The translations under genes and the position numbers were made by a program. Shown one piece after another: positions 3,340-48,228 of a stretch of 64,000 nucleotides of DNA. The notes beneath the pieces are model-generated. The model made no database searches. It was not told where the DNA came from and was given only the letters and a program-made list of their open reading frames with translations. The stretch is taken from positions 1 to 64,000 of the IMG/VR virus record IMGVR_UViG_3300014494_000005, one strand, 5' to 3'. Each line of letters starts with the position of its first letter. Within the stretch, counting starts at the first letter, position 1.

Positions 3340-4611
3340 ATGTTAAAATTATACAAATATAAACTAAAACCGGATAATAACCAAATTATTTTATTAAATA
3401 AACATTTTGGCTGTATTAGATTTATTTATAATTATTTTCTCAATGAACGTAAAAAAGAATATGAAACTAATAATCAAACACTTAATTATTATGATAATAC
3501 AAAAGCATTAACCGAATTAAAGCATTCAAATGAATATATTTGGCTTAATGAAATTTGTGCACAATCTTTACAACAGTCTCTTAAACATCTTGATGGAGCA
3601 TATAATGGATTTTTTAAAGGTAGGACAAAGTTTCCAAATTTTAAATCTAAACACAATAAAAATAGTTTTTGCGTTCCTCAAGCAGTAAAATTAATTAATA
3701 ATAAACTATATATACGTAAATTTAAAGGAGGAATTGGTGTTATTATTGATAGGAAATTTAAGGGAATTATAAAACAATGCACAATAACCAAAACACCAAC
3801 TAATGAATATTTTGTTAGTATTTTAGTTGAAACCGAACATGTTAAATTACCTAAAACTAATAAAAGTATTGGAATAGATTTGGGATTAAAAGATTTTGCA
3901 ATAACATCAGAAGGATTTAAATATAAAAACAATAAATATACTAAACAATATGAAAAGAAATTAAAAAAAGCACAACAACATTTATCAAAAAAAACAAAAA
4001 ATTCGAAAAAATTTGAACAACAAAGATTGAAAGTGGTTAAAATATACAAGAAGATAACCAATTCTCGTGTAGATAATCTACATAAAGTAAGTACTGACCT
4101 AATTAAAAAATATGACATAATTTGTTTAGAAGACCTTAATATTAAAGGTATGTCAACAAGATGCAAGCCAAAACAAGACAAAAATGGTAAGTATTTATCC
4201 AATGGTCAATCAGCAAAATCAGGACTTAATAAATCTATATCAAATGCTAGTTGGGGTACTTTTGTTGAAATGCTTAATTATAAAGCCAATTGGAATGATA
4301 AACAAATTGTTAAAATTAATAGATTTTATCCTTCAAGTAAAACATGTCATATTTGTGGCTATATAAATCAAGACTTAAATCTTTCTATTAGAGAATGGAA
4401 GTGTCCTAAATGTGGTATTGTTCATGATAGGGATATAAATGCTGCAAAAAACATATTAAAAGAAGGTCAGAAAATATTACTTAATGATTTAACAAATAAT
4501 ATTGACAATAACAAATCGTCAGGGACTGACGATAACAGACGTGGAGACCAAATAAGACCTGTTATAACGGGCACAATCGATGAAACGTCCAAAATTCTTA
4601 GCATAAGTTAA
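3340..4611 (+). mobile_element. tnpB: IS200/IS605-family TnpB RNA-guided endonuclease (no tnpA nearby)
   Basis: N-terminal HTH (YKYKLKP...FGCIRFIYN), RuvC-I IGIDLG, RuvC-II CLEDL, Zn ribbon CHICG...CPKCG, RuvC-III HDRDINAAKNI. Confidence 0.95.
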
Positions 4612-7159: not shown

Positions 7160-7446
7160 TTTTTGTTATATTTTACTGCTCTTTTATACGTACCAACACT
7201 TCCAAACGGATTATGATTATATAATGATTTATCTGCGGTATATGCCGATATGTCAATCCAAATTTCATCACCGGATTTTAAATCAATCACAGATTTAGCA
7301 ATGCTATTGTTATCAACAAAACTATGTAGATTAACACAAGCAAGTCTTTTATTGGTATTCTGAAATCTAATTTCATAAAAATTGTTTCTTTTTACAATCT
7401 TATCAATCTTAAATAAACCAAAATTTCCGTTAAATTGAGTTTCCAT
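7156..7446 (-). CDS. Hypothetical protein
   Basis: 96-aa ORF directly downstream of a promoter motif. Confidence 0.6.
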   Translation of the reverse strand: METQFNGNFGLFKIDKIVKRNNFYEIRFQNTNKRLACVNLHSFVDNNSIAKSVIDLKSGDEIWIDISAYTADKSLYNHNPFGSVGTYKRAVKYNKN

Positions 7447-7470
7447 ATCGAAAATATTAAATATTATACA

Positions 7471-7502
7471 ATATTACGAAAAATTATTTAAATTGTTGCA
7501 TA
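7471..7502 (-). promoter_or_regulatory. Variant motif TGCAAC-N16-CGTAAT
   Basis: Same 16-nt spacing as the TGTAAC motif. Confidence 0.5.
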
Positions 7503-7555
7503 ATTACAATACTTTTCCAAAACTAATTTGTATTTATCTATACAATATATATACC

Positions 7556-7708
7556 ATGAAAGCAAATAAAGAAATGTATTCATTAAGAATACCGTCAGAA
7601 CAACTGAAGTATTTACGTGATACTGCAAAAAATAACTTTACTACAGTTACACAATTAATTTTGGACTTAGTAAATCAAAAAATGAAAAGTGATATAAAAT
7701 ATGAATAA
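7556..7708 (+). CDS. Small ribbon-helix-helix-like DNA-binding protein (copy 1)
   Basis: 50 aa: beta-like MYSLRIP, then two helices (EQLKYLRDTAK, TVTQLILDLV); paralog at 12141. Confidence 0.65.
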   Translation: MKANKEMYSLRIPSEQLKYLRDTAKNNFTTVTQLILDLVNQKMKSDIKYE

Positions 7709-8534
7709 AATATGTGGAATTTATAAAATAACGTCACCATCGGGTAAAATTTATATCGGGCAATCGAGAAATATAAAACGAAGATTGAATGATTATATTA
7801 ATAATAGATGTTATGAACAATTATTAATATATCGTTCAATTAATAAATATGGTTGGAATATGCATAAATTTGAGGTAATTCATGAATGCACAGAACCAGA
7901 ATTAAATTATTTGGAAAAATATTATATAAAGTTTTACGATACATTTGATACAAAACATGGAATGAATTTAACAAGTGGTGGTGACCACATAAAACTTTCA
8001 AAAGAATCATTACGAAAAATTAGTGATAGTTCTAAGAATAGAATTGTTTCACAAGAAACTAGAGATAAATTTAGTAAAATTCATAAATGGAAAAAAATAT
8101 CTAAAGAACATAAATCAAGTTTAAGAAAATTTCATTTAGGTAAAAAACACACTAAAGAAAGTATTGAAAAGATGAGAATAATAAAATTAAATAAAAAACC
8201 ATCTAATGAAACAAAAGAAAAACTAAGAATTGTTAATACAGGAAAAAAACGTTCAGACATAACAAAAGAAAAAATAAGAAAATCAAAATTAGGAAATAAA
8301 ATATGGCTAGGTAAAAAACATTCTGAAGAAACCAAACAAAAATTAAGTGAAATTCATAAGAATAATTATGAAATTTATAACCAAAATAATGAATTGGTTC
8401 ATAAATTCAGAAATACCATTAGATTGGAATTAAAGAAATTAAATTTACCTCGTGAACGTTTTTGTGAAACATATAGAAGAAATGAAAAAATAAAAAATGG
8501 TAAATATAAGGATTGGTATATTATCAAACTATAA
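7701..8534 (+). CDS. GIY-YIG homing endonuclease with NUMOD3 repeats
   Basis: CGIYKITSPSGKIYIGQS, R and E catalytic positions, repeated GKKHS/TEETK.KL. Confidence 0.92.
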   Translation: MNKICGIYKITSPSGKIYIGQSRNIKRRLNDYINNRCYEQLLIYRSINKYGWNMHKFEVIHECTEPELNYLEKYYIKFYDTFDTKHGMNLTSGGDHIKLSKESLRKISDSSKNRIVSQETRDKFSKIHKWKKISKEHKSSLRKFHLGKKHTKESIEKMRIIKLNKKPSNETKEKLRIVNTGKKRSDITKEKIRKSKLGNKIWLGKKHSEETKQKLSEIHKNNYEIYNQNNELVHKFRNTIRLELKKLNLPRERFCETYRRNEKIKNGKYKDWYIIKL

Positions 8535-10022
8535 TTATTCATCAATTTTATTACATAATATGGTTGCAGTTAATTCGGGTCTTGTAAGGGCAGTATAAAA
8601 CAATTGATTTTTTTCACGTAACACCCAATTTTCTTCAAAATCGCTTAAGATGATTGTAACATGCTGATATGTAGACCCTTGCACTTTATGACAAGTTAAA
8701 AAATAGCCATAATCTAGGTCCTTGACAATAACTTCACCACTATTTCTAAGTCTACCATTTTGATATTTATCAATATTTTTCATTAATAAATTATTACGCC
8801 TGAATTCATAATATTTATTCCACATCTTCTTATTTGATTTTGCACAATCTTTAAAAAAATCGTGCATTTGTGCATATAAATGTAAATTTTTGTGGTTATT
8901 CGTATTAATAATAAAAACGTCTTCGAATTTAAATTTACCTTTGGGAAGGTCTTCACGAATTTTAACGGGATACCCACTAATTCCATAAGAATTTTCTTCT
9001 AAACCAGACTTTTCAATAACTCGATAATCAGCAGAATTTTGAATAATTATTTGATTTTGTCTATCATTTGTGATTGTTCGATATCCGCAAATAACATCAT
9101 TCACTTCAATAATATCTGCTTTATTTCCAAAAATTGCGGTTCTAACAACATTATTTGATTGCATTACAGTTTCATTTTTCCAAGCAATTCCTCGACAAAA
9201 ATTTATGTCTTTATTAAATTCTTCAGATGTGAATTTTTCCAAAACCATTTTTCTGAATTCTCTTTTATCTATAGTAAATATAATGCCCTCACCATTTATA
9301 TTAATATTAGTTTTTCTTGAAAAATTACCAGCATCAATACTCGTTAAATTATTTCTTATGATATCTGCAATCAATAATATGGGATTTGTGTCAGCTTGTC
9401 TCATAATTTCAGTGAGAATATATTTTTCAATATCTTCTTGAATAAAAACTGCAGATTCTTTTTCATTTATCGGAGGTAGCTGATGTGGGTCTCCTACGAA
9501 TAATACCTTTGTTCGACTATCTTTTGTTTTTTCTTTAATTAAATTAAAAAGGTCTTGATTTACCATTGAACTTTCATCCAAAATTACAAGGCTATAAAAT
9601 GTAATACGTGGTAAAGCGATTGGATTAAATTGAGGGAAGTTCGGTGAAAAATTTTCTAAATCCAAATCCGGACGTAAACCTAAAAGTGAGTGAAGGGTTT
9701 TGGATTCTTTTTCGGTAATATTTTGAATGATTCTGGTCGCCTTATGCGTGGGTGCTGATACTACAACACCATATCGATAATCATCTAATATTTTCTTTAT
9801 AATTGTTGATTTTCCACTACCAGCAGGTCCTTCAAGAGTAAAAAATGTTTTATCCTTTTCTTTTAGCCATTTCTTAATTCTTTGAATAGCTTCAAATTGT
9901 TGGTCATTAAATACAATTTTTTTACCATTTGGAAGAATTAGTTCATTATCAGCTACTGTTTCTTCTTCGTCTTCATTTAAAAAACTAAAAATATCATCAT
10001 TAGTTATCAATTCTTTACTCAT
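8535..10022 (-). CDS. dda: Dda-like SF1B DNA helicase
   Basis: Walker A GPAGSGKST, SAPTHKA, ILDESSMV, VGDPHQLPP, TCHKVQGSTY, YTALTRP. Confidence 0.88.
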   Translation of the reverse strand: MSKELITNDDIFSFLNEDEEETVADNELILPNGKKIVFNDQQFEAIQRIKKWLKEKDKTFFTLEGPAGSGKSTIIKKILDDYRYGVVVSAPTHKATRIIQNITEKESKTLHSLLGLRPDLDLENFSPNFPQFNPIALPRITFYSLVILDESSMVNQDLFNLIKEKTKDSRTKVLFVGDPHQLPPINEKESAVFIQEDIEKYILTEIMRQADTNPILLIADIIRNNLTSIDAGNFSRKTNININGEGIIFTIDKREFRKMVLEKFTSEEFNKDINFCRGIAWKNETVMQSNNVVRTAIFGNKADIIEVNDVICGYRTITNDRQNQIIIQNSADYRVIEKSGLEENSYGISGYPVKIREDLPKGKFKFEDVFIINTNNHKNLHLYAQMHDFFKDCAKSNKKMWNKYYEFRRNNLLMKNIDKYQNGRLRNSGEVIVKDLDYGYFLTCHKVQGSTYQHVTIILSDFEENWVLREKNQLFYTALTRPELTATILCNKIDE

Positions 10023-10261
10023 TTTGTATTAGCTAAACTAAATAAATTATATAAAATATGTCTATCTATTATTTTTGCCATAAATGCTGCATTCCAATCA
10101 GGAAATTTTGGTTCAATATTATCTTCTGATAAATTATATGCAACTTCTTTTTCAAATTGTTTGATTTCTTCATCTGTCATTTTATTTAAGAAATCTGGAA
10201 ATTTATCGTTTCTAATGATTGGTTTTTTAATTAATTCTTCTATTTTAATTGTATATTCCAT
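10019..10261 (-). CDS. Hypothetical protein
   Basis: 80-aa ORF overlapping the helicase start. Confidence 0.55.
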   Translation of the reverse strand: MEYTIKIEELIKKPIIRNDKFPDFLNKMTDEEIKQFEKEVAYNLSEDNIEPKFPDWNAAFMAKIIDRHILYNLFSLANTK

Positions 10262-10264
10262 TCT

Positions 10265-10675
10265 TTATTTTTTAAGACATTTTAAAGCACTAATTAAACT
10301 TTCCAATACATTTGCATTATCGATATATCCAGCATCTTCTTCATTAAAGAATTCAACAGTATAATTATTACATCTACTATCATAATCAATATGGTCATAA
10401 ACATCACTATCAGTATTATCTTTACATTCATCATTTGCACATGAAATCAGTATTGCTCTTTCATTTTTTAGATTATATACAAAATAATAATAAGGTGTGT
10501 TTCCAGATTCTTCTGCAGAAACATCTTCTCTTTCAAAACCTAAAGATAATAAAGTTTTTTCAGTTATTGGAAATTCTTTTATTGTTTCTTTTTTAATTAA
10601 AATTATTTTTAATTCATTCATTGCATCCCAAAGTCTTTGATATGCTTCATTTAATAATTTTTCATTGCTTTTCAT
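10265..10675 (-). CDS. Hypothetical protein
   Basis: 136-aa ORF. Confidence 0.6.
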   Translation of the reverse strand: MKSNEKLLNEAYQRLWDAMNELKIILIKKETIKEFPITEKTLLSLGFEREDVSAEESGNTPYYYFVYNLKNERAILISCANDECKDNTDSDVYDHIDYDSRCNNYTVEFFNEEDAGYIDNANVLESLISALKCLKK

Positions 10676-10685
10676 ATTTTAACTA

Positions 10686-10853
10686 TTAATTTTCAGATGT
10701 AATTTTTAATTTTTTTAAACACTTTTTACATGTTACGGCTTCTTTAATAGATGTCCATTCTTCATAAAATTCCATTCCACAAGCTGTTAACGAATAATAA
10801 GTTTCTGTATCACTTTCATTTCCATTTATTGCAGTAGCATAATGTATTTTCAT
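10686..10853 (-). CDS. Small Cys-containing protein (below ORF-track cutoff)
   Basis: MKIHYATA...TACG...VTCKKCLKKLKITSEN*, 55 aa, fills the gap between neighbours. Confidence 0.6.
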   Translation of the reverse strand: MKIHYATAINGNESDTETYYSLTACGMEFYEEWTSIKEAVTCKKCLKKLKITSEN

Positions 10854-10860
10854 ATTTCAA

Positions 10861-11454
10861 TCATTTTATATAATTACTTTGATAAAATTCGATTGCTTTT
10901 TTTATTGTTTCATTATGATTAAATGCCCAATTAAGTTTTTTATCATATTTACAATAAAAATCTGAAATTGATATCCATTGAGCTAATTTTGTTTCATTAT
11001 TTGAATAATTTTCAACATAAATTGGAAGTCTTTCAAGATGTTCATGAAAATCATATACTGAAAGATATATAAATGAAACATTTTGGCGATGATTGCCCGG
11101 ATTATCTCTGATTTCTATAGGTTTTTCATTATTATTTGTGATTAGTAAGTCATTATAATCTGGAAGATATAAACTGGTTTCTTCATATACTTCTCTTATC
11201 ATTGATTCAAAAATATTTTCATTAAAGTCAACATAACCATACGGTAAGCAATATTTATTTTTTTCATCACGCATTTTATTTGACCTTTGGGTAATAAGTA
11301 CATGCATTCCACCAACTAATGGAATAATTAATACAACTCCAACTGTTGCAATAGACCTACTTATCCAATAATCAAGATTTATAATACCTTGATTTGATTT
11401 ATGTTTAATTATTAGATGTTCATTAGGAACATTATTAAATATAGGCTTATTCAT
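10861..11454 (-). CDS. Nudix hydrolase
   Basis: Nudix box GYVDFNENIFESMIREVYEETSL. Confidence 0.85.
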   Translation of the reverse strand: MNKPIFNNVPNEHLIIKHKSNQGIINLDYWISRSIATVGVVLIIPLVGGMHVLITQRSNKMRDEKNKYCLPYGYVDFNENIFESMIREVYEETSLYLPDYNDLLITNNNEKPIEIRDNPGNHRQNVSFIYLSVYDFHEHLERLPIYVENYSNNETKLAQWISISDFYCKYDKKLNWAFNHNETIKKAIEFYQSNYIK

Positions 11455-11457
11455 AAA

Positions 11458-12021
11458 TTAAAATTTAACCCAACCATTAATAAAAGATAATGGAAGTTCA
11501 ATATAATTAATAATTCCACTCTCAGTATGTTCTTTAACTATTTCACCTATATTATTTAATTTTTCTCTTTCTAACCAATTAATTATTGATTGAATAACTT
11601 CTTCTTTTGAATCATTAGTTTTAAATTTACCAACACAACAATCCGAAACATCTTCATCGAAATAAAAAAACATAAATTTATTTGGTTTATTATTAGAATC
11701 ATAATTTTCTGCTTCAATTTCAGCAAGAATAACAATATCATCTCTAAAACAATTTAATTCAGTATGAAACATTTCGTTTTTACCTAATAAAATTTTATCT
11801 TTTAATTCACCTTTTGTATGATTATCATCGACTTTTTCATCATCTGGTGTATATCTATCGATTAAATAACACTTAATCGGATTAACATAATTAATAAATT
11901 CATTTAAAAATGTTGAAGATATATAACACCAAATAGTTCCATAAGGAATTGGATTATGTGCCACTTCTGATGGATAGTCAATACTTTCATTAAAGTAATT
12001 CCAAATTGTTTTATCTTTCAT
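11458..12021 (-). CDS. Hypothetical protein
   Basis: 187-aa ORF; TATCTTTG element upstream at ~12040. Confidence 0.65.
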   Translation of the reverse strand: MKDKTIWNYFNESIDYPSEVAHNPIPYGTIWCYISSTFLNEFINYVNPIKCYLIDRYTPDDEKVDDNHTKGELKDKILLGKNEMFHTELNCFRDDIVILAEIEAENYDSNNKPNKFMFFYFDEDVSDCCVGKFKTNDSKEEVIQSIINWLEREKLNNIGEIVKEHTESGIINYIELPLSFINGWVKF

Positions 12022-12140
12022 AATTTTTATAATTTATAATACAAAGATAATTATTATTTTTCTTTTAACGCAATTATTTTTTACAAATATAGAAATTTTT
12101 TAAATAAATACAGTATTTATCTACATAATATGTAGACAAT

Positions 12141-12293
12141 ATGAAAGAAAATAAAATTTTTTACACATTCAGAATTCATTCTAAACAATTAGTATATCTT
12201 AGAAAGAAAGCTAAGACTGAATTTACTACCGTTACACAACTAATTTTAGATTTAATAACCAAAGATATGAAAAATAATTTAAATAATGAATAA
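12141..12293 (+). CDS. Small ribbon-helix-helix-like DNA-binding protein (copy 2; not in ORF track)
   Basis: MKENKIFYTFRIHSKQLVYLRKKAKTEFTTVTQLILDLITKDMKNNLNNE*, 50 aa, clear paralog of 7556-7708. Confidence 0.7.
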   Translation: MKENKIFYTFRIHSKQLVYLRKKAKTEFTTVTQLILDLITKDMKNNLNNE

Positions 12294-13131
12294 AATATGC
12301 GGAATTTATAAAATAACTTCACCTACTGGAAAGATTTATATTGGTCAGTCTGTTGATATAAATCGTAGATTAAATTCATATAAAAGTACAAAATGTAAAA
12401 GACAACCTAAATTATATAATTCAATCATAAAATATGGTTGGAATGCCCATGAATTTGAAATAATTTGTGAATGCGAAGAATCGAAACTTAATGAATTAGA
12501 AAAATATTATATTAAACAATTTAATTGTTTTGACACTAAAAATGGTATGAATTTAACAGATGGTGGTGACCATTTTAAATTTAATGAAAAATTTAGGGAA
12601 AGAATGCGTATATTTATGAAAGATAATAAATATTGGTTGGGTAAACATCATTCTGATGAAACCAAACAAAAATTAAGTATTGCAAGTAAGGGTAGAAAAC
12701 ACACAAAAGAAAGTATATTATTGGTTGCTAATAAAAATAGAGGACAAAAACGTTCTGATGAAACCAAACAAAAAATGAGAATGGCTCAGTTAGGAAAAAA
12801 ACATACTAAAGAATCAATATTAAAAATGTGTATCGCAAGTAAGGGTAGAAACTTGGGAATGAAATTTAGTGATGAAATTAAGAAAAAAATGAGTATTGCT
12901 CAATTAGGAAAAAAATTTTCTGAAGAAGCTAAACAGAAAATGAGTATGGCACATTCTAATAATTATGAAATTTATAATCAAAATAATGAATTAATTTATA
13001 AATTCAAAAGTAATATTAAAAAAGAATTAAAAAAGTTAAAATTACCTAGAGAATCTTTTTGTAATACGTACAAATATAATATAAAAATTAATAAAGGAAA
13101 GTATAAGGATTGGTATATAATTAAATTATAA
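12286..13131 (+). CDS. GIY-YIG homing endonuclease with NUMOD3 repeats
   Basis: CGIYKITSPTGKIYIGQS; paralog of 7701-8534 including the C-terminus GKYKDWYIIKL. Confidence 0.92.
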   Translation: MNKICGIYKITSPTGKIYIGQSVDINRRLNSYKSTKCKRQPKLYNSIIKYGWNAHEFEIICECEESKLNELEKYYIKQFNCFDTKNGMNLTDGGDHFKFNEKFRERMRIFMKDNKYWLGKHHSDETKQKLSIASKGRKHTKESILLVANKNRGQKRSDETKQKMRMAQLGKKHTKESILKMCIASKGRNLGMKFSDEIKKKMSIAQLGKKFSEEAKQKMSMAHSNNYEIYNQNNELIYKFKSNIKKELKKLKLPRESFCNTYKYNIKINKGKYKDWYIIKL

Positions 13132-13143
13132 TTAATAATTCTT

Positions 13144-13641
13144 TTAAGAAACAATATCTATTTTATATTTCCTATAACTAAAAACTCTAGGCATAATACC
13201 CTCTCTTCTTAAAAGAGATAATAAAATACAACGTTCTTCTTTATAGTTATTAGATTGTATTTCAGGATTTTTAATTATAGTTATTTTACCTTCATTTGAG
13301 ACATAAAGAAGTCCCCATTTTTCAGGTAAATCATTTTCTTTTATAATTCCAATTGGACACATATAACTTCTAAATTCGCCTAGTCCTAGTTCAGGATATT
13401 TTCGCCAATATTTTTTCTTATCTACAAGAAAATCAGAACGAGACATTTTAACTTCAATTAATTGTGTTGAACGACTTGAAATTCCAAATGCATCTGGACA
13501 TTCACCAACACGGTCTAATTCACATACAACATATTGACATTTATGAAATGAATGAATTCCAGTATATCTAAGATATTTAGCAGCTTTAACACATAAATCT
13601 CTATGAGATAAATTATTAAATTTTGTTAATTTTTTCTTCAC
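13144..13641 (-). CDS. PD-(D/E)xK nuclease, MmcB-like
   Basis: ECPDAFG...LIEVKMSRSDF..D..K, LPEKWGLL. Confidence 0.65.
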   Translation of the reverse strand: MKKKLTKFNNLSHRDLCVKAAKYLRYTGIHSFHKCQYVVCELDRVGECPDAFGISSRSTQLIEVKMSRSDFLVDKKKYWRKYPELGLGEFRSYMCPIGIIKENDLPEKWGLLYVSNEGKITIIKNPEIQSNNYKEERCILLSLLRREGIMPRVFSYRKYKIDIVS

Positions 13642-33616: not shown

Positions 33617-34603
33617 ATGGATACAATACAAACATTTGAAAAAGAAATTATTGAATTATCGAAAATTAAATCGCAAAAAGAAATTGCATTACTATATAAC
33701 AGTACTCAGCCAAAAATTAGTAATATTTTAAGGAAAAATAAAATTATAAATAAAAAGAGTAGATTAAATATGAGTCATCTTGCACTTAATATTGACTATT
33801 TTAAAGAAATTAATTCTAATGATAAAGCATATTGGCTTGGATTTATATGTGCTGATGGTAATATTAAAAAAACAAACAATAAGGTTAGTTTAATATCTAA
33901 AGATTTAGAAGTAATTGTAGGATTTAAAGAAGCAATTGGCGCAGAACATAAAATTAGTAAAAGGGAAATTTTTGATAAACGAACAAATAAAACATATACT
34001 GGATATAGTATTCAGATTGGCAATGAAATATTTACCCAGCATTTAATTAATTTAGGTATTACTAATAATAAAACAAATGTATTGGAATTTCCAAATATTG
34101 AAGAGAAATACTATTCATATTTTATTGCTGGATTATTTGATGGTGATGGGTCAATTTCATTGAAAGGGATAAATAAAAATAGATTAGTAATTAATTTAAT
34201 TTCTACAAATGAAATGTTATTATATATTAAAGAATATATTTTAAATAAATTAAATATTAAACCAAAATATTGTTGTGATGTTAGTAAAAATAAACAAAAT
34301 GTTTGGAAAATGTATTTGTATTCAGATGCACATAGATTTTTAAAATTTATATATTGTGATGCTAATTTCAAATATTATTTAAAAAGAAAATATAATATAT
34401 TTCTAAAAAATATTAATTATCGAAATAATATTCGTCATTTAAAAAAAGTAATACAATGTGATAAAAATATGAATATAATTAAAATATGGAATACAATTAG
34501 AGAAGCAAGTATTGAAATGAATTGTCACGAAAACACGTTAAATTATAATATAAAGAAAGAAAGATTATTTAAAAATTATCATTGGAAACATGAAAATGAA
34601 TAA
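33617..34603 (+). CDS. LAGLIDADG homing endonuclease (two motifs, C-terminal NUMOD1-like)
   Basis: YWLGFICADGNI and YFIAGLFDGDGSI; KVIQCD..IWNTIREA; AAGTATTTATA at 33592-33602. Confidence 0.9.
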   Translation: MDTIQTFEKEIIELSKIKSQKEIALLYNSTQPKISNILRKNKIINKKSRLNMSHLALNIDYFKEINSNDKAYWLGFICADGNIKKTNNKVSLISKDLEVIVGFKEAIGAEHKISKREIFDKRTNKTYTGYSIQIGNEIFTQHLINLGITNNKTNVLEFPNIEEKYYSYFIAGLFDGDGSISLKGINKNRLVINLISTNEMLLYIKEYILNKLNIKPKYCCDVSKNKQNVWKMYLYSDAHRFLKFIYCDANFKYYLKRKYNIFLKNINYRNNIRHLKKVIQCDKNMNIIKIWNTIREASIEMNCHENTLNYNIKKERLFKNYHWKHENE

Positions 34604-37385: not shown

Positions 37386-37909
37386 ATAAAAATAAATTAA
37401 TATGTGTCGATGTTGAAAGTGATGGTGGATATATGCCAGATTATTCAATAGTTTGTTTTGCTGCAATAATTGTTGAACCATCACTTTCTAAAACATTTTA
37501 TGGACAAATGCGACCAATTTCTGATAAATGGAATCCTGATGCATTAGCTATAAGTGGTTTTAGTAGAGAAGAACATCTTAAATTTGATGAACCTTATATA
37601 GTAATGAAAAGATTTGCAGATTGGTTAAAAGAAAATGTAAATGGTCAACCAATAGGTATTTCAGATAATAATGGTTATGATTTTGGTGTATGTTTAAATT
37701 ATTATTTTCATAAATTTTATGGTAGTAATCCATTTTCTTGGAGTTCAAGAAGGATTGGGGATTTGTTTTGCGGTGTTGAACACGATATGTGGTATAAATG
37801 GAAAAAACATAGAATAACATCCCATAATCATAACCCCAAATTTGATGTAAAAGGAAATGCTGAAGCATTATTGTATTTATCTAAAACATATAATATTAAA
37901 TTACCATAG
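37382..37909 (+). CDS. DEDDh 3'-5' exonuclease
   Basis: CVDVESDG, SDNNGYDFG, HNHNPKFDV. Confidence 0.85.
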   Translation: MNKNKLICVDVESDGGYMPDYSIVCFAAIIVEPSLSKTFYGQMRPISDKWNPDALAISGFSREEHLKFDEPYIVMKRFADWLKENVNGQPIGISDNNGYDFGVCLNYYFHKFYGSNPFSWSSRRIGDLFCGVEHDMWYKWKKHRITSHNHNPKFDVKGNAEALLYLSKTYNIKLP

Positions 37910-38005
37910 TGTTATGATAATCCATCAAGAATTTTTAATGAAATTAATTGAAAATAATATTCATTATAAAAATAAAAAATTTAAAGTAATTGGTGAATAT
38001 AAAAA

Positions 38006-38794
38006 ATGAGAGACCATATTTTAATTGAAGATAAATTTGGATTATTAAAAAGTACACCAGATAAACTTTTACATGGAAATAAACCTACAGTACAATCTGC
38101 ATTAAATAAATATGAATATATTGTAAATAAATTTAATTATATTCATTTCAACAAATATGTTTATAAAAAATTTCTTTATTTAAAAGAAACTACAGAATTT
38201 GAATTTATTTGCCCCAAACATGGTATAATGAAAACATTAGTTAATTATCATTTAAAGCATGGGTGTTCAAAATGTGGAATGGAATTAGCAAAAAATAGAC
38301 GACCTAAATCTTTAAATAATTTTATAAACCAATCTAATGCAGTACATAATAATAAATATAATTATTTTAATGCCAAATATATTAATACTTCAACCAAATT
38401 AATTATAACATGTTCAATACATGGTGATTTTTTACAAACACCCAATAAACATTTACAAGGTAGGGGTTGTAAAAAATGTAGTAGAGAAAATAATAATTTT
38501 AAAAAATTGGACTGGATTTCCAAAAAAGGTATTGCAACCTTTTATATTTTAAATTGTTGGAATGAAAATGAAAAATTTTATAAATATGGAATTTGCACTG
38601 GAGAAATAAAAAATAGGTTTAATTCAAAAACAAAAATGCCATATAATTATACAATAGAAATTAAATTACAAAATCTTAACAGGTCAATAATTTGGGAAAT
38701 GGAAGAAAAATATAAAAAGAATAATTTATTAATTCATTATAAACCTAAAATTTATTTTAAGGGTTCATCTGAATGTATTATTAATATAAACTAA
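38006..38794 (+). CDS. Putative homing endonuclease: CxxHG repeats (DUF723-like) + GIY-YIG-like C-terminus
   Basis: CPKHG..CSKC, CSIHG..CKKC; FYIL...FYKYGI...NRF. Confidence 0.7.
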   Translation: MRDHILIEDKFGLLKSTPDKLLHGNKPTVQSALNKYEYIVNKFNYIHFNKYVYKKFLYLKETTEFEFICPKHGIMKTLVNYHLKHGCSKCGMELAKNRRPKSLNNFINQSNAVHNNKYNYFNAKYINTSTKLIITCSIHGDFLQTPNKHLQGRGCKKCSRENNNFKKLDWISKKGIATFYILNCWNENEKFYKYGICTGEIKNRFNSKTKMPYNYTIEIKLQNLNRSIIWEMEEKYKKNNLLIHYKPKIYFKGSSECIININ

Positions 38795-47331: not shown

Positions 47332-48228
47332 TTATATTAATAAATTCAATTTATTTTTTATATTTTCATCATATTTAATTCTAGTGAGATTTATATTGTT
47401 ATTTTTACAATATTCTTCTTTCATTTTATCTCTTTTCTGTTGTACATCAAATCCAATTTCACCTCCAAAAAACTTAATTGATTTAAAATGTTGTATTCCA
47501 TCATATTCAATACATGTACCATATTTAGGTAAATAAAAATCAAAAAATAAATATGACTTATATTTACAATTATTGAATTTCTTTTGATATTCGAAATTAA
47601 TATTATTTTCTTTTAAAAAATTCATAACATGAATTTCTCCTTTACTTTGTTTACATTTAGAACAACCAATACCACATAAATGATTATTTGCTCTTTGTTC
47701 AAATATACCATGAATGGGACAAATAATTTTTATTTTAGTTTTATTATCTTTATATTCAACTAATGAATAATTATATTTATTATTATGAATTTTATTTGAC
47801 TTTTCTTTAAAATATTTATTATCCATATAATTTCCAGCACATTTAGAACAACCCTTATTACTTAAGTGGTCATTTGGTGTTTGTTCAAATATACCATGAA
47901 TAGGACAAATTATTTTAATATTTGTTTTTGAATCAACATACTCAACCAATGAATAATCATACTTATCACCATGAATAACTTTTGTTTTTTCAATAAATTC
48001 AATATTTGTTAGTATGATAGATAAATGATTTTTTATTTTTCCACATTTAGGACAACCCTGACCATTTAAATGATTATGAGGTGTTTGCTCAAAAACTCCA
48101 TGTTTTTTACATGTTATTTTTACTTTAGTATAATTATTAGCATATTGAACTAATGAATAATCATATTCATTATTATGAATAATATTTGCCTTTTCAATAA
48201 AAGTAATATTTGTTAATCTCCTTGCCAT
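47332..48228 (-). CDS. Homing endonuclease: three CxxHG repeats + PD-(D/E)xK/Vsr-like domain
   Basis: CKKHG/CPIHG x2; SKGE...FDFYLP...IEYDGIQHF; AAGTATTTATG at 48243-48253. Confidence 0.85.
   Translation of the reverse strand: MARRLTNITFIEKANIIHNNEYDYSLVQYANNYTKVKITCKKHGVFEQTPHNHLNGQGCPKCGKIKNHLSIILTNIEFIEKTKVIHGDKYDYSLVEYVDSKTNIKIICPIHGIFEQTPNDHLSNKGCSKCAGNYMDNKYFKEKSNKIHNNKYNYSLVEYKDNKTKIKIICPIHGIFEQRANNHLCGIGCSKCKQSKGEIHVMNFLKENNINFEYQKKFNNCKYKSYLFFDFYLPKYGTCIEYDGIQHFKSIKFFGGEIGFDVQQKRDKMKEEYCKNNNINLTRIKYDENIKNKLNLLI

What the first reader, a model, noticed from the sequence alone, without database searches (positions are those of the whole stretch)
7529..13131. Duplicated two-gene mobile module: RHH repressor-like ORF + GIY-YIG homing endonuclease
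The same unit occurs twice (7529-8534 and 12111-13131), each antisense to the surrounding operon. It consists of a GTATTTATCTA motif, a 50-aa RHH-like ORF sharing FTTVTQLILDL, and a GIY-YIG/NUMOD3 gene whose ATG overlaps the small ORF's end by 8 nt. The endonucleases end in an identical GKYKDWYIIKL*. The second small ORF is missing from the ORF track. Free-standing HEGs are usually single genes, so a co-mobile dedicated regulator or inhibitor (autorepressed, TA-like architecture) would be unusual. Copy 1 abuts the helicase stop with a 0-bp gap.
Basis: partly seen in the sequence, partly recalled or inferred. Interest (0 to 1): 0.65.

Follow-up and report, generated by a model that had tools for sequence, protein, structure and literature searches.

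The report
Homing nuclease cassettes with own Arc-like regulator
Two diverged copies of a selfish two-gene cassette sit in this 349-kb peat phage, each pairing a tiny Arc-like DNA-binding protein with a GIY-YIG homing nuclease; the same tiny protein precedes at least four other kinds of nuclease gene in other large phages, which suggests a portable brake on selfish nucleases.

Summary
Both units have the same layout: GTATTTATCTA, a 50-aa ORF, then a GIY-YIG/NUMOD3 gene overlapping it by 8 nt. Both lie antisense to their neighbours. They are old paralogues (58% and 55% amino-acid identity), not a recent duplication.

The small ORF is a genuine gene (dN/dS 0.04-0.36). It is an Arc-type ribbon-helix-helix protein by profile match, fold and predicted dimer.

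The pair is inherited as a unit. Every close relative of the small ORF found in viral contigs precedes the same nuclease clade, at more than one kind of site. Related phages show filled and empty sites beside the helicase gene.

A sister branch of the small-ORF family precedes LEM-3-like GIY-YIG, EndoVII/HNH-like, endonuclease-I-like and TnsA-like genes.

One correction: GTATTTAT is not cassette-specific. It is a genome-wide promoter-like motif upstream of about 72 genes, including portal and terminase. The cassette-specific part is the dyad-rich leader between that motif and the ATG.

Best reading: a self-contained homing cassette whose RHH dimer represses its own promoter, with the nuclease translationally coupled to it. 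DNA binding and repression are inferred, not shown. A toxin-antitoxin-style inhibitor is unlikely. I rate it a new variant of a known kind.

The parts
7530..7537 (+).
   Evidence: The octamer occurs 147 times in the genome. 72 of these lie 0-34 nt upstream of an ATG-started ORF of at least 45 aa (65 with the 60-aa limit used for the control). Permuted octamers give a mean of 2.3 at that 60-aa limit. Genes behind it include portal and terminase.
7538..7555 (+). Cassette-specific leader of unit 1 between the promoter-like core and the ATG; candidate operator with only weak dyad symmetry
   Evidence: It differs from the A/T-only sequence that follows GTATTTAT at other genes. Its counterparts in 11 related units carry dyads.
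7556..7708 (+). Small ORF 1: 50-aa Arc-like ribbon-helix-helix protein
   Evidence: PHROG 582 Arc-like repressor, E=2.5e-4. Family profile against Arc 1b28, E=2.7e-5. AF2 pLDDT 91.6 with an extended N-terminus and two helices. Foldseek top hits are Arc, TM 0.8-0.9. Dimer model ipSAE 0.43 against 0.01 for the best control. dN/dS 0.04-0.36.
7701..8534 (+). GIY-YIG/NUMOD3 homing endonuclease gene 1 (277 aa); its ATG overlaps the small ORF by 8 nt
   Evidence: Pfam GIY-YIG 30.5 bits and NUMOD3 41 bits, both above cut-off. PHROG 314 homing endonuclease, E=5e-36. The GIY, YIG, Arg, Glu and Asn columns are invariant in the clade.
8535..10022 (-). SF1 (PIF1/AAA_30-type) helicase gene abutting unit 1; the likely neighbourhood of the homing target
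   Evidence: Pfam AAA_30 E=2e-25, PIF1, UvrD_C_2. Relatives carry the cassette at this same gene end (L024, L027, L031, L037-39) or lack it (L036, L040).
12113..12120 (+).
   Evidence: Same genome-wide motif as in unit 1.
12120..12136 (+). Palindrome TCTACAT-AAT-ATGTAGA in the leader of unit 2; candidate operator
   Evidence: Read from the sequence. It is the strongest dyad among the 12 leaders.
12141..12293 (+). Small ORF 2: 50-aa Arc-like RHH protein
   Evidence: 58% identical to ORF 1. Matches the family profile at E=3.6e-26. dN/dS 0.24 against ORF 1.
12286..13131 (+). GIY-YIG/NUMOD3 homing endonuclease gene 2 (281 aa); its ATG overlaps the small ORF by 8 nt
   Evidence: Pfam GIY-YIG 36.7 bits and NUMOD3 54.5 bits. 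PHROG 314, E=8e-38.

Best explanation
Each unit is a free-standing homing-endonuclease cassette that carries its own expression control. It has four parts: a copy of the phage's general promoter-like box (GTATTTAT, also used by the portal and terminase genes), a short dyad-rich leader, a 50-aa Arc-type ribbon-helix-helix gene, and an I-TevI/Seg-like GIY-YIG nuclease gene that starts 8 nt before the small gene ends.

Proposed mechanism: both genes are made from one transcript. The nuclease is translated by coupling to the small ORF. The RHH dimer binds the leader that overlaps or abuts the promoter and shuts it down. The result is a small, self-limited pulse of nuclease.

Shown here: the gene structure, the RHH fold, the predicted dimer, purifying selection, co-inheritance of the pair, filled and empty sites, the genome-wide use of GTATTTAT, and the link of this small-protein family to several nuclease families.

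Inferred: DNA binding to the leader, repression, co-transcription, translational coupling, and nuclease activity and target.
For: RHH identity:
- PHROG 582 Arc-like repressor, E=2.5e-4.
- Family profile against PDB: Arc E=2.7e-5 over its full length, HP0222 E=0.006.
- AF2 pLDDT 91.6, with residues 1-13 extended and helices at 14-26 and 31-48.
- The top Foldseek hits are Arc, and nearly all of the 50 listed rows are RHH proteins. TM is 0.8-0.9, but E is only about 0.02 because the protein is so small.
- Homodimer model: ipSAE 0.43 against a best control of 0.01. That mark was reached by 20 of 30 solved homodimers and 1 of 23 solved monomers. Runs agree in at least 95% of contacts, and partner pLDDT is at least 76. 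The strands pair antiparallel, centred on residue 9.

Real gene: dN/dS is 0.04-0.36 in the 10 of 12 pairs where dS could be computed. That is as low as or lower than the nuclease's in 8 of those 10 pairs (nuclease range 0.21-0.49).

Unit inheritance:
- All 11 subgroup-A loci from viral contigs have the small ORF followed by the same nuclease clade, at -35 to +5 nt.
- The cassette lies at the helicase gene end in relatives whose helicases are 58-81% identical to this one. It is absent there in L036 and L040.
- The window itself holds the cassette at two different sites.

Generic regulator rather than specific partner: subgroup B of the family precedes and overlaps LEM-3-like GIY-YIG, EndoVII/HNH-like and NUMOD3 plus endonuclease-I-like genes. 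It also precedes a TnsA-like gene.

Cis element:
- All 12 subgroup-A units have GTATTTAT 18-24 nt before the ATG, followed by a dyad or 11-nt-spaced repeats.
- Four nuclease genes of the same clade lack the small ORF. They keep GTATTTAT but have an ordinary A/T leader.
- In subgroup B the upstream box TATATAATGTAAA is essentially cassette-specific in its genomes.

Precedent: Arc encoded in IS605 elements binds and represses the element's own promoters, and its homologues were noted next to homing endonuclease genes (bioRxiv 10.64898/2026.09.24.754181).

Transcription: peat metatranscriptome contigs span the small ORF-nuclease junction in both units.
Against: - There is no direct evidence of DNA binding or repression.
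- The leaders of the two window units differ from each other and from the commonest variant. Unit 1 has only a 4-bp dyad. Dyads are easy to find in 26% GC DNA.
- In the commonest variant the dyad (GTATTTA-N3-4-TAAATAC) could instead be two overlapping divergent promoter boxes, as at 144596/144612.
- Nuclease genes of the clade persist intact without the small ORF, so the regulator is not indispensable. In both informative records (G001 and G007) an RHH-bearing cassette is also present, so it could act in trans.
- In one syntenic phage group the small ORF is present whether or not an HNH-like gene follows it.
- The RNA-library contigs give no strand information and may include carried-over DNA.
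Confidence: 0.55

Rival explanations
1. The link reflects where nucleases land, not what the small protein does. On this view the RHH gene is an ordinary phage regulator of other genes. Homing endonuclease genes preferentially insert just downstream of it, borrowing its promoter and its stop codon for translational coupling, as T4 seg and mob genes do with host ORFs.
For: In one syntenic group (L025, L060, L062, L064, L067, L071) the small ORF sits in a fixed place, between a 124-aa gene and a TnsA-like gene. An HNH-like gene is present between them in three loci and absent in three. T4 free-standing nuclease genes often overlap the upstream host ORF by 11-23 bp (PMC2988022). More remote family members (P0022, P0020) are not next to recognisable nucleases.
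Against: In subgroup A the empty sites lack both genes. The window holds the pair at two unrelated sites, with similarity starting at the promoter box and ending at the nuclease stop codon. LEM-3-type and endonuclease-I-type pairs lie antisense between unrelated flanks. So the small ORF moves with the nuclease. Even in the fixed-place group, the next gene is nuclease-like (TnsA-like).
Confidence: 0.15
2. The RHH dimer works with the nuclease at DNA rather than on its promoter. It could be an extra DNA-recognition subunit that helps target the homing site. Or it could be a protector that occupies the target or a near-cognate site in the carrier genome to prevent self-cleavage.
For: One natural fusion exists: P0030 has the small-protein domain followed by a LEM-3-like GIY-YIG domain (Pfam E=3e-13). 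Gene overlap implies linked amounts of the two proteins.
Against: The fusion is seen on a single 1.6-kb contig, and one indel in the overlap would create it. The I-TevI-like nucleases already have NUMOD3 repeats and a conserved C-terminal domain for DNA binding. The same small-protein family accompanies nucleases of unrelated folds. Nucleases of the clade persist without it.
Confidence: 0.12
3. Toxin-antitoxin-like pair: the small protein binds the nuclease directly and neutralises it.
For: The architecture resembles type II systems: a small RHH gene upstream of, and overlapping, a potentially toxic enzyme gene. Foldseek also lists RHH antitoxin domains such as CopA, AtaR, TacA and MazE.
Against: RHH antitoxins neutralise through a C-terminal extension. 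Here the fold and the predicted dimer interface use residues 3-48 of 50, leaving no such tail. The closest sequence and structure matches are Arc itself, not antitoxins. Partners of unrelated fold argue against a shared binding surface. No binding prediction for the pair was run.
Confidence: 0.05
4. The small ORF matters only as a translated leader that delivers ribosomes to the nuclease start. Its protein product has no function.
For: The 8-nt overlap, the absence of a Shine-Dalgarno-like sequence (read from the sequence), and the absence of a sigma-70-like promoter before the nuclease ATG.
Against: Amino-acid conservation is strong, with dN/dS as low as 0.04. The RHH fold is recognisable across 27 clusters that are only about 30% identical.
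Confidence: 0.03

Closest known systems
Free-standing GIY-YIG homing endonuclease genes of T4-like phages (seg genes) and I-TevI
   Same: N-terminal GIY-YIG domain, NUMOD3-type linker repeats and a separate C-terminal domain. They insert between conserved genes and are sporadic among relatives. Expression is limited by late-type promoters, overlap with the upstream ORF and autorepression (PMC2988022).
   Different: In T4 the nuclease itself is the autorepressor (I-TevI), or the cassette has no promoter and overlaps a host gene. Here the upstream overlapping gene is a separate DNA-binding protein that moves with the nuclease gene.
Arc repressor of phage P22 (MetJ/Arc ribbon-helix-helix superfamily)
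   Same: Same size (50 against 53 aa) and the same strand-helix-helix layout. About 25-33% identity in the structural alignments. The predicted dimer has an antiparallel beta-ribbon.
   Different: Arc controls the immI region of a temperate phage. This family sits in front of nuclease genes in large uncultured lytic-type phages. Operator binding is untested.
Arc proteins encoded in IS605-family transposons (bioRxiv 10.64898/2026.09.24.754181)
   Same: A protein of about 50 aa with an RHH fold, inside a selfish element, next to the element's nuclease. It has been shown to repress the element's own promoter. The authors also saw homologues next to homing endonuclease genes.
   Different: That element is a bacterial transposon with TnpA and TnpB, whereas this is a protein-only homing cassette in phages. 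No sequence comparison with those Arc proteins was possible here.
Controller (C) proteins of type II restriction-modification systems
   Same: A small DNA-binding regulator gene directly upstream of, and often overlapping, the nuclease gene. It acts on repeats in its own promoter to time and cap nuclease expression (established knowledge; regulation review PMC3874152 listed but not read).
   Different: C proteins are helix-turn-helix, not RHH. They serve a methylase-nuclease pair, and no methylase is present here.

Membership tests
Ribbon-helix-helix (MetJ/Arc) superfamily | Significant sequence-profile similarity to known RHH proteins | tested here: met
   Family profile A3 against PDB: Arc 1b28 E=2.7e-5 over residues 3-47, HP0222 E=0.006, AvtR E=0.1. 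PHROG 582 Arc-like repressor E=2.5e-4. No Pfam hit for the single sequences.
Ribbon-helix-helix (MetJ/Arc) superfamily | N-terminal strand followed by two helices, in about 45 residues | tested here: met
   AF2 with the 27-row alignment gives pLDDT 91.6, residues 1-13 extended, helices 14-26 and 31-48. Foldseek top hits are Arc structures with TM 0.8-0.9, and nearly all of the 50 listed rows are RHH proteins. E-values are weak (0.02) because of the small size.
Ribbon-helix-helix (MetJ/Arc) superfamily | Obligate dimer with an intermolecular antiparallel beta-ribbon | tested here: met
   Prediction only. ipSAE 0.43 against a best control of 0.01. That mark was reached by 20 of 30 solved homodimers and 1 of 23 monomers. 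Contacts 9-9, 7-11 and 6-12, plus helix-B contacts 35/38/39. The pass may partly reflect the model's memory of solved RHH dimers.
Ribbon-helix-helix (MetJ/Arc) superfamily | Binding to repeated or dyad operator DNA | not testable with these tools
   Candidate sites exist: dyads and 11-nt-spaced repeats in the leaders.
GIY-YIG homing endonucleases (I-TevI/Seg type) | GIY-YIG catalytic domain with conserved GIY, YIG, Arg, Glu and Asn | tested here: met
   Pfam PF01541 at 30.5 and 36.7 bits (cut-off 22.6). Invariant columns G6 I7 Y8, Y18 I19 G20, R28, E72 and N89 in the clade alignment.
GIY-YIG homing endonucleases (I-TevI/Seg type) | Modular DNA-binding part (NUMOD3 repeats plus a C-terminal domain) | tested here: met
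   NUMOD3 at 41 and 54.5 bits. The number of repeats varies, and the C-terminal block of about 55 aa ending in GWYIIKL is conserved.
GIY-YIG homing endonucleases (I-TevI/Seg type) | Sporadic presence at a fixed site among related genomes (filled and empty sites) | tested here: met
   Filled at the helicase gene end in L024, L027, L031 and L037-39. Empty in L036 and L040.
GIY-YIG homing endonucleases (I-TevI/Seg type) | Site-specific cleavage of the empty allele, and gene conversion | not testable with these tools
   Needs enzyme assays or phage crosses.
Type II toxin-antitoxin system with RHH antitoxin | Antitoxin has a toxin-binding extension beyond the RHH core | tested here: not met
   The protein is 50 aa. 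The fold and dimer interface span residues 3-48.
Type II toxin-antitoxin system with RHH antitoxin | Direct antitoxin-toxin complex | not tested
C-protein-controlled restriction-modification system | Helix-turn-helix controller protein plus a methyltransferase partner | tested here: not met
   The regulator has an RHH fold. The cassette holds only two genes. The likeness is in layout only.
IS605-family element with Arc | TnpA and/or TnpB within the element | tested here: not met
   The cassette contains only the RHH and GIY-YIG genes. A TnpB-like transposase gene lies elsewhere in the window, at 3340-4611, and is unlinked.

The most novel reading that the evidence does not exclude
The Arc-like gene plus its leader may be a portable controller module for selfish nucleases. 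It would have been recombined with at least four unrelated nuclease families in large phages: I-TevI-like GIY-YIG, LEM-3-like GIY-YIG, EndoVII/HNH-like and endonuclease-I-like. Its role would parallel that of C proteins in restriction-modification systems and Arc in IS605: the element brings its own repressor so that the nuclease is expressed briefly and at low level. Copies lacking the repressor might be held in check in trans by a repressor-bearing copy in the same genome.
Probability: 0.4. Interest if true: 0.75.

Novelty: new variant of a known kind. Interest (0 to 1): 0.6.

Why it matters
Homing endonuclease genes are usually described as single-gene parasites. Their expression is thought to be limited by host signals, RNA structure or the nuclease's own DNA binding.

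A cassette-borne, dedicated repressor would add a new layer of self-restraint. It would also explain how a nuclease gene can sit antisense inside an early operon of a large phage without harm.

The small-protein family is unnamed. It has no Pfam model. It is absent from 185,579 representative prokaryotic genomes and from cultured phages. It marks nuclease cassettes of several kinds, so it could be used to find mobile nucleases in metagenomes.

The genome-wide GTATTTAT motif also gives a first handle on the transcription programme of this uncultured peat phage group.

Tried and rejected
- AF2 on the small ORF with a 5-row alignment gave one long helix (pLDDT 68). It was uninformative and was superseded by the 27-row run.
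- The 5-row profile against PDB gave only Arc at E=1.5.
- Megablast of the region against GenBank phages found nothing.
- tblastn of the small ORFs against GenBank phages found only the uncultured 735-kb phage LR756501/LR756503.
- The search for related loci with the whole family alignment failed for lack of a conserved stretch, so the alignment was split into two subgroups.
- The scan of representative prokaryotic genomes found no relatives.
- The sigma-70 promoter and intrinsic terminator scans found nothing at the cassette ends.
- Folding the leaders as RNA gave only weak hairpins (-1.8 to -6.5 kcal/mol), so an RNA switch is not favoured.
- My first count suggested the motif was rare and cassette-specific. 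Counting the 8-mer core overturned that.
- A suspected decayed small ORF upstream of the L080 nuclease gene did not align convincingly and was dropped.
- My by-eye guess that the gene after P0021 is TnpB-like got no support from Pfam or PHROGs.
- The nuclease tree is too poorly resolved (100 columns) to count gains and losses of the small ORF.
- Covariation between beta-strand residue 7 (M/L against Y/F) and the two leader variants is visible. It is confounded by shared descent and is not used as evidence.
- No prediction of an RHH-nuclease complex was made, because the single job went to the homodimer.

Full report
**Setting**

The window is the first 64 kb of a 348,923-bp IMG/VR virus record. 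CheckV rates it complete, and its GC content is 26%. Near-identical sequence is present in peat metatranscriptome libraries from several studies. No close relative exists among GenBank phages.

**Check of the observation**

- Unit 1: GTATTTATCTA at 7530-7540, a 50-aa ORF at 7556-7708, and a 277-aa gene at 7701-8534.
- Unit 2: the same motif at 12113-12123, a 50-aa ORF at 12141-12293, and a 281-aa gene at 12286-13131.
- In both, the nuclease ATG lies 8 nt before the end of the small ORF, and both nucleases end in GKYKDWYIIKL.
- All neighbouring ORFs are on the other strand. Unit 1 ends one base before the end of a PIF1/AAA_30-type helicase ORF.
- DNA similarity between the units begins at the motif and stops about six bases after the stop codon.
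- The genome holds only these two copies.

The copies are old. The small ORFs are 58% identical and the nucleases 55%, and synonymous sites are near saturation. Copy 2's small ORF is closer to one in another phage than to copy 1. They are better described as two members of one cassette family than as a duplication.

**The nuclease genes**

Both score above the Pfam cut-offs for GIY-YIG and NUMOD3, and both match PHROG homing-endonuclease families. Their nearest relatives in cultured phages are Seg- and I-TevI-like genes.

In an alignment of ten clade members the GIY, YIG, Arg, Glu and Asn columns are invariant. The number of NUMOD3 repeats varies. A C-terminal block of about 55 aa is conserved. 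Nothing suggests decay.

**The small ORF is a real gene and an Arc-type RHH protein**

- Across the pairs of units where dS could be computed, dN/dS is 0.04-0.36, against 0.21-0.49 for the nuclease.
- An exhaustive profile search of 1.84 billion representative proteins found only 27 clusters at E of 0.001 or better. Nearly all are 45-60 aa long.
- A profile of this family matches Arc repressor over its whole length (E=2.7e-5) and the RHH protein HP0222 (E=0.006). The single sequence matches PHROG 582, Arc-like repressor, at E=2.5e-4.
- AlphaFold2 with the family alignment gives pLDDT 91.6. The N-terminus is extended, with helices at 14-26 and 31-48.
- Foldseek's best matches are Arc structures (TM 0.8-0.9), followed almost entirely by other RHH proteins. 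E-values are only about 0.02 for so small a protein.
- A homodimer prediction scored ipSAE 0.43 against a best control of 0.01. That mark was reached by 20 of 30 solved homodimers and 1 of 23 solved monomers. Runs agree in at least 95% of contacts, and partner pLDDT is at least 76. The contacts are those of an antiparallel beta-ribbon centred on residue 9, plus helix-B packing. This shows likeness to RHH dimers; it does not show that this protein binds.

**The pair travels together**

- The word-based search and the viral-contig scans found the small ORF at 70-81% identity in related phages. It is always followed by a GIY-YIG gene at the same place, against the end of the helicase gene.
- In all 11 subgroup-A loci from viral contigs, the next gene belongs to the same nuclease clade. 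It starts between 35 nt before and 5 nt after the small ORF's stop.
- Helicase relatives give a presence/absence series. Phages with helicases 58% identical to this one carry the pair there (L037-39). Phages at 59% and 65% do not (L036, L040). In L036 the helicase gene is followed after two bases by the NADAR-like gene.

Together with the two sites in the window, this shows that the promoter box, small ORF and nuclease gene behave as one mobile block.

**How tight is the link, seen from the nuclease side?**

I examined 73 I-TevI-like loci sharing the ICGIYKITSP N-terminus.

- Only the closest clade has the small ORF.
- Four further members have GTATTTAT 12-22 nt before the nuclease ATG and no small ORF.
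- The remainder have neither.

All bearers fall in one 23-row clade, but the tree is poorly resolved.

One bare copy is L024 5180-5953. It keeps GTATTTAT followed by 11 bases that match the 3' end of the small ORF, which looks like a deletion.

Both informative records with a bare copy (G001 and the 91%-complete G007) also hold a bearing cassette. So the small ORF is not indispensable in cis. Control in trans is possible but rests on two cases.

**The family reaches beyond GIY-YIG**

A second branch of the small-protein family has the signature YTTMTQYLIDLIKKDK. It precedes several kinds of gene, and overlaps the first three below by 8-26 nt:

- LEM-3-like GIY-YIG genes (L066, L068, L070);
- EndoVII/HNH-like genes (L071, and L025 in the 735-kb phage LR756501);
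- a NUMOD3 plus endonuclease-I-like gene (L063);
- a TnsA-like gene, in one syntenic group, reached either directly or after the HNH-like gene.

Several of these pairs lie antisense between unrelated flanks. One 285-aa protein fuses the small domain to a LEM-3-like GIY-YIG domain, but it is seen on a single 1.6-kb contig.

More remote members are not next to recognisable nucleases (P0022 beside a resolvase, P0020, P0018, P0021). The family was not found in 185,579 representative prokaryotic genomes. Among GenBank phages it occurs only in that one uncultured huge phage.

**The motif**

GTATTTAT occurs 147 times in the genome. With ORFs of at least 60 aa, 65 occurrences lie 0-34 nt upstream of an ATG start, most often 14-15 nt. 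Permuted octamers give a mean of 78 occurrences and 2.3 such placements, with a maximum of 11. Lowering the ORF limit to 45 aa raises the count to 72.

Genes behind it include the portal protein, the large terminase, other homing endonuclease genes and a TnpB-like transposase gene. So it is the phage's own promoter-like box, probably of a late class. The class is inferred from the portal and terminase genes only.

At ordinary genes the box is followed by A/T-only sequence. In the cassettes it is followed by a distinctive leader:

- In seven units the leader is GTATTTA-N3-4-TAAATAC, followed by TTGTAAAT and TTGTCAAT 11 nt apart.
- In unit 2 it is the palindrome TCTACAT-AAT-ATGTAGA.
- L052 and L058 have other dyads.
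- Unit 1 has only a 4-bp dyad.

Subgroup B has its own box, TATATAATGTAAA, followed by a second TGTAAAT-like repeat 11 nt on. That box is essentially confined to the cassettes in those genomes.

These leaders are the natural candidates for operators, but AT-rich DNA yields dyads easily. The commonest dyad could also be two overlapping divergent promoter boxes, as at 144596/144612. As RNA the leaders fold only weakly. No sigma-70-type promoter or intrinsic terminator was found at either cassette.

**Expression**

Four peat RNA libraries from three studies hold contigs identical to the region. These include pieces spanning the leader, small ORF and nuclease start of unit 1 (7400-7759 and 7556-7850) and of unit 2 (12036-12346 and 12226-13106).

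Contigs give neither strand nor level, and DNA carry-over cannot be excluded. This is compatible with co-transcription but does not demonstrate it.

**Interpretation**

The best-supported reading is a self-contained homing cassette. It has a resident-type promoter box, an operator-like leader, an Arc-like repressor gene and a translationally coupled nuclease gene. The repressor caps expression of both genes.

Four points favour a transcriptional role over protein-protein inhibition or co-targeting:
- The protein is a bare RHH core.
- Its closest relatives by sequence and structure are Arc itself.
- Its family accompanies nucleases of unrelated folds.
- A distinctive leader co-occurs with it.

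The known regulatory repertoire of T4 homing endonuclease genes comprises borrowed promoters, RBS-hiding hairpins, overlap with host ORFs and autorepression by I-TevI itself. It contains no separate regulator (PMC2988022).

The nearest precedent is recent. Arc proteins encoded in IS605 elements repress the element's promoters, and their homologues were noted next to homing endonuclease genes (bioRxiv 10.64898/2026.09.24.754181).

The main rival is that nucleases simply tend to land behind a pre-existing regulator gene. That fits one syntenic group in subgroup B, but not the co-mobile subgroup-A cassettes studied here.

**Verdict**

The finding is a new variant of a known kind. DNA binding, repression, coupling and cleavage all await experiment.

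**Tool use**

The costly protein searches were each used once, because family scans left the small protein open.

Noticed in passing
whole genome G000; in the window e.g. 3310, 33594, 48251(-), 51847(-), 53010(-), 54410(-), 62533(-): GTATTTAT is a genome-wide promoter-like box. It occurs 147 times, and 72 of these lie 0-34 nt (mode 14-15 nt) upstream of gene starts, usually followed by A/T-rich sequence. Genes behind it include portal, large terminase, several homing endonuclease genes and a TnpB-like gene. It is probably a late-class promoter of this uncultured phage group.
   Followed up: partly
window 3340-4611 (+): A 423-aa ORF matches PHROG 506 'transposase' at E=7e-126 (IS605 OrfB/TnpB-like by that label). 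It is preceded by the GTATTTAT box, so another mobile nuclease-type gene uses the phage's own promoter motif.
   Followed up: partly
window 47332-48228 (-) and 33617-34603 (+): Two more nuclease genes carry the same upstream box: an HNH homing-endonuclease-like gene (PHROG 559, E=2e-85) and an endonuclease (PHROG 4645, E=6e-45). Neither has a small RHH ORF in front.
   Followed up: no
window 37857-38009 and 38006-38794 (+): A 50-aa ORF overlaps a 262-aa Cys-rich ORF by 4 nt; neither was assigned to a family. A further GTATTTATCTA lies at 37873, inside the 3' end of the preceding 175-aa ORF. This may be another small-ORF plus large-ORF cassette, or chance.
   Followed up: partly
G000 67733-68930 (-), just outside the window: A 77-aa ORF is preceded by GTATTTAT and looks RHH-like by eye, but has no family hit. 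It heads a three-gene run ending in a T5orf172/MUG113 GIY-YIG-type gene (Pfam E=3e-14).
   Followed up: partly
G000 202372-203106 (+), outside the window: A GIY-YIG homing endonuclease gene lies directly after a thymidylate-synthase-like gene. It has the GTATTTAT box and no small ORF, which is the classic td-associated position.
   Followed up: no
L024 5156-5953 (IMGVR_UViG_3300025736_000816): A nuclease gene of the same clade, next to the NUDIX gene, lacks the small ORF. GTATTTAT is followed by 11 bases matching the small ORF's 3' end and then the ATG, which looks like a clean deletion of the regulator gene.
   Followed up: partly
P0030; L153 374-1231: A single 285-aa protein joins the small RHH domain to a LEM-3-like GIY-YIG domain. 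It is seen on one 1.6-kb contig only, so it may be a real fusion or an indel in the gene overlap.
   Followed up: partly
L060 2778-3299 and homologues (L025 2711-3232): The 173-aa gene that follows subgroup-B small ORFs is labelled 'head closure' in PHROG 218, yet it matches the TnsA-like endonuclease N-terminal domain (Pfam E=4e-16). The label and the fold disagree.
   Followed up: no
window 7400-13200: Identical contigs occur in peat metatranscriptome libraries from several studies, so the phage is from peat. One A-to-G difference at 10642 appears in one run.
   Followed up: partly
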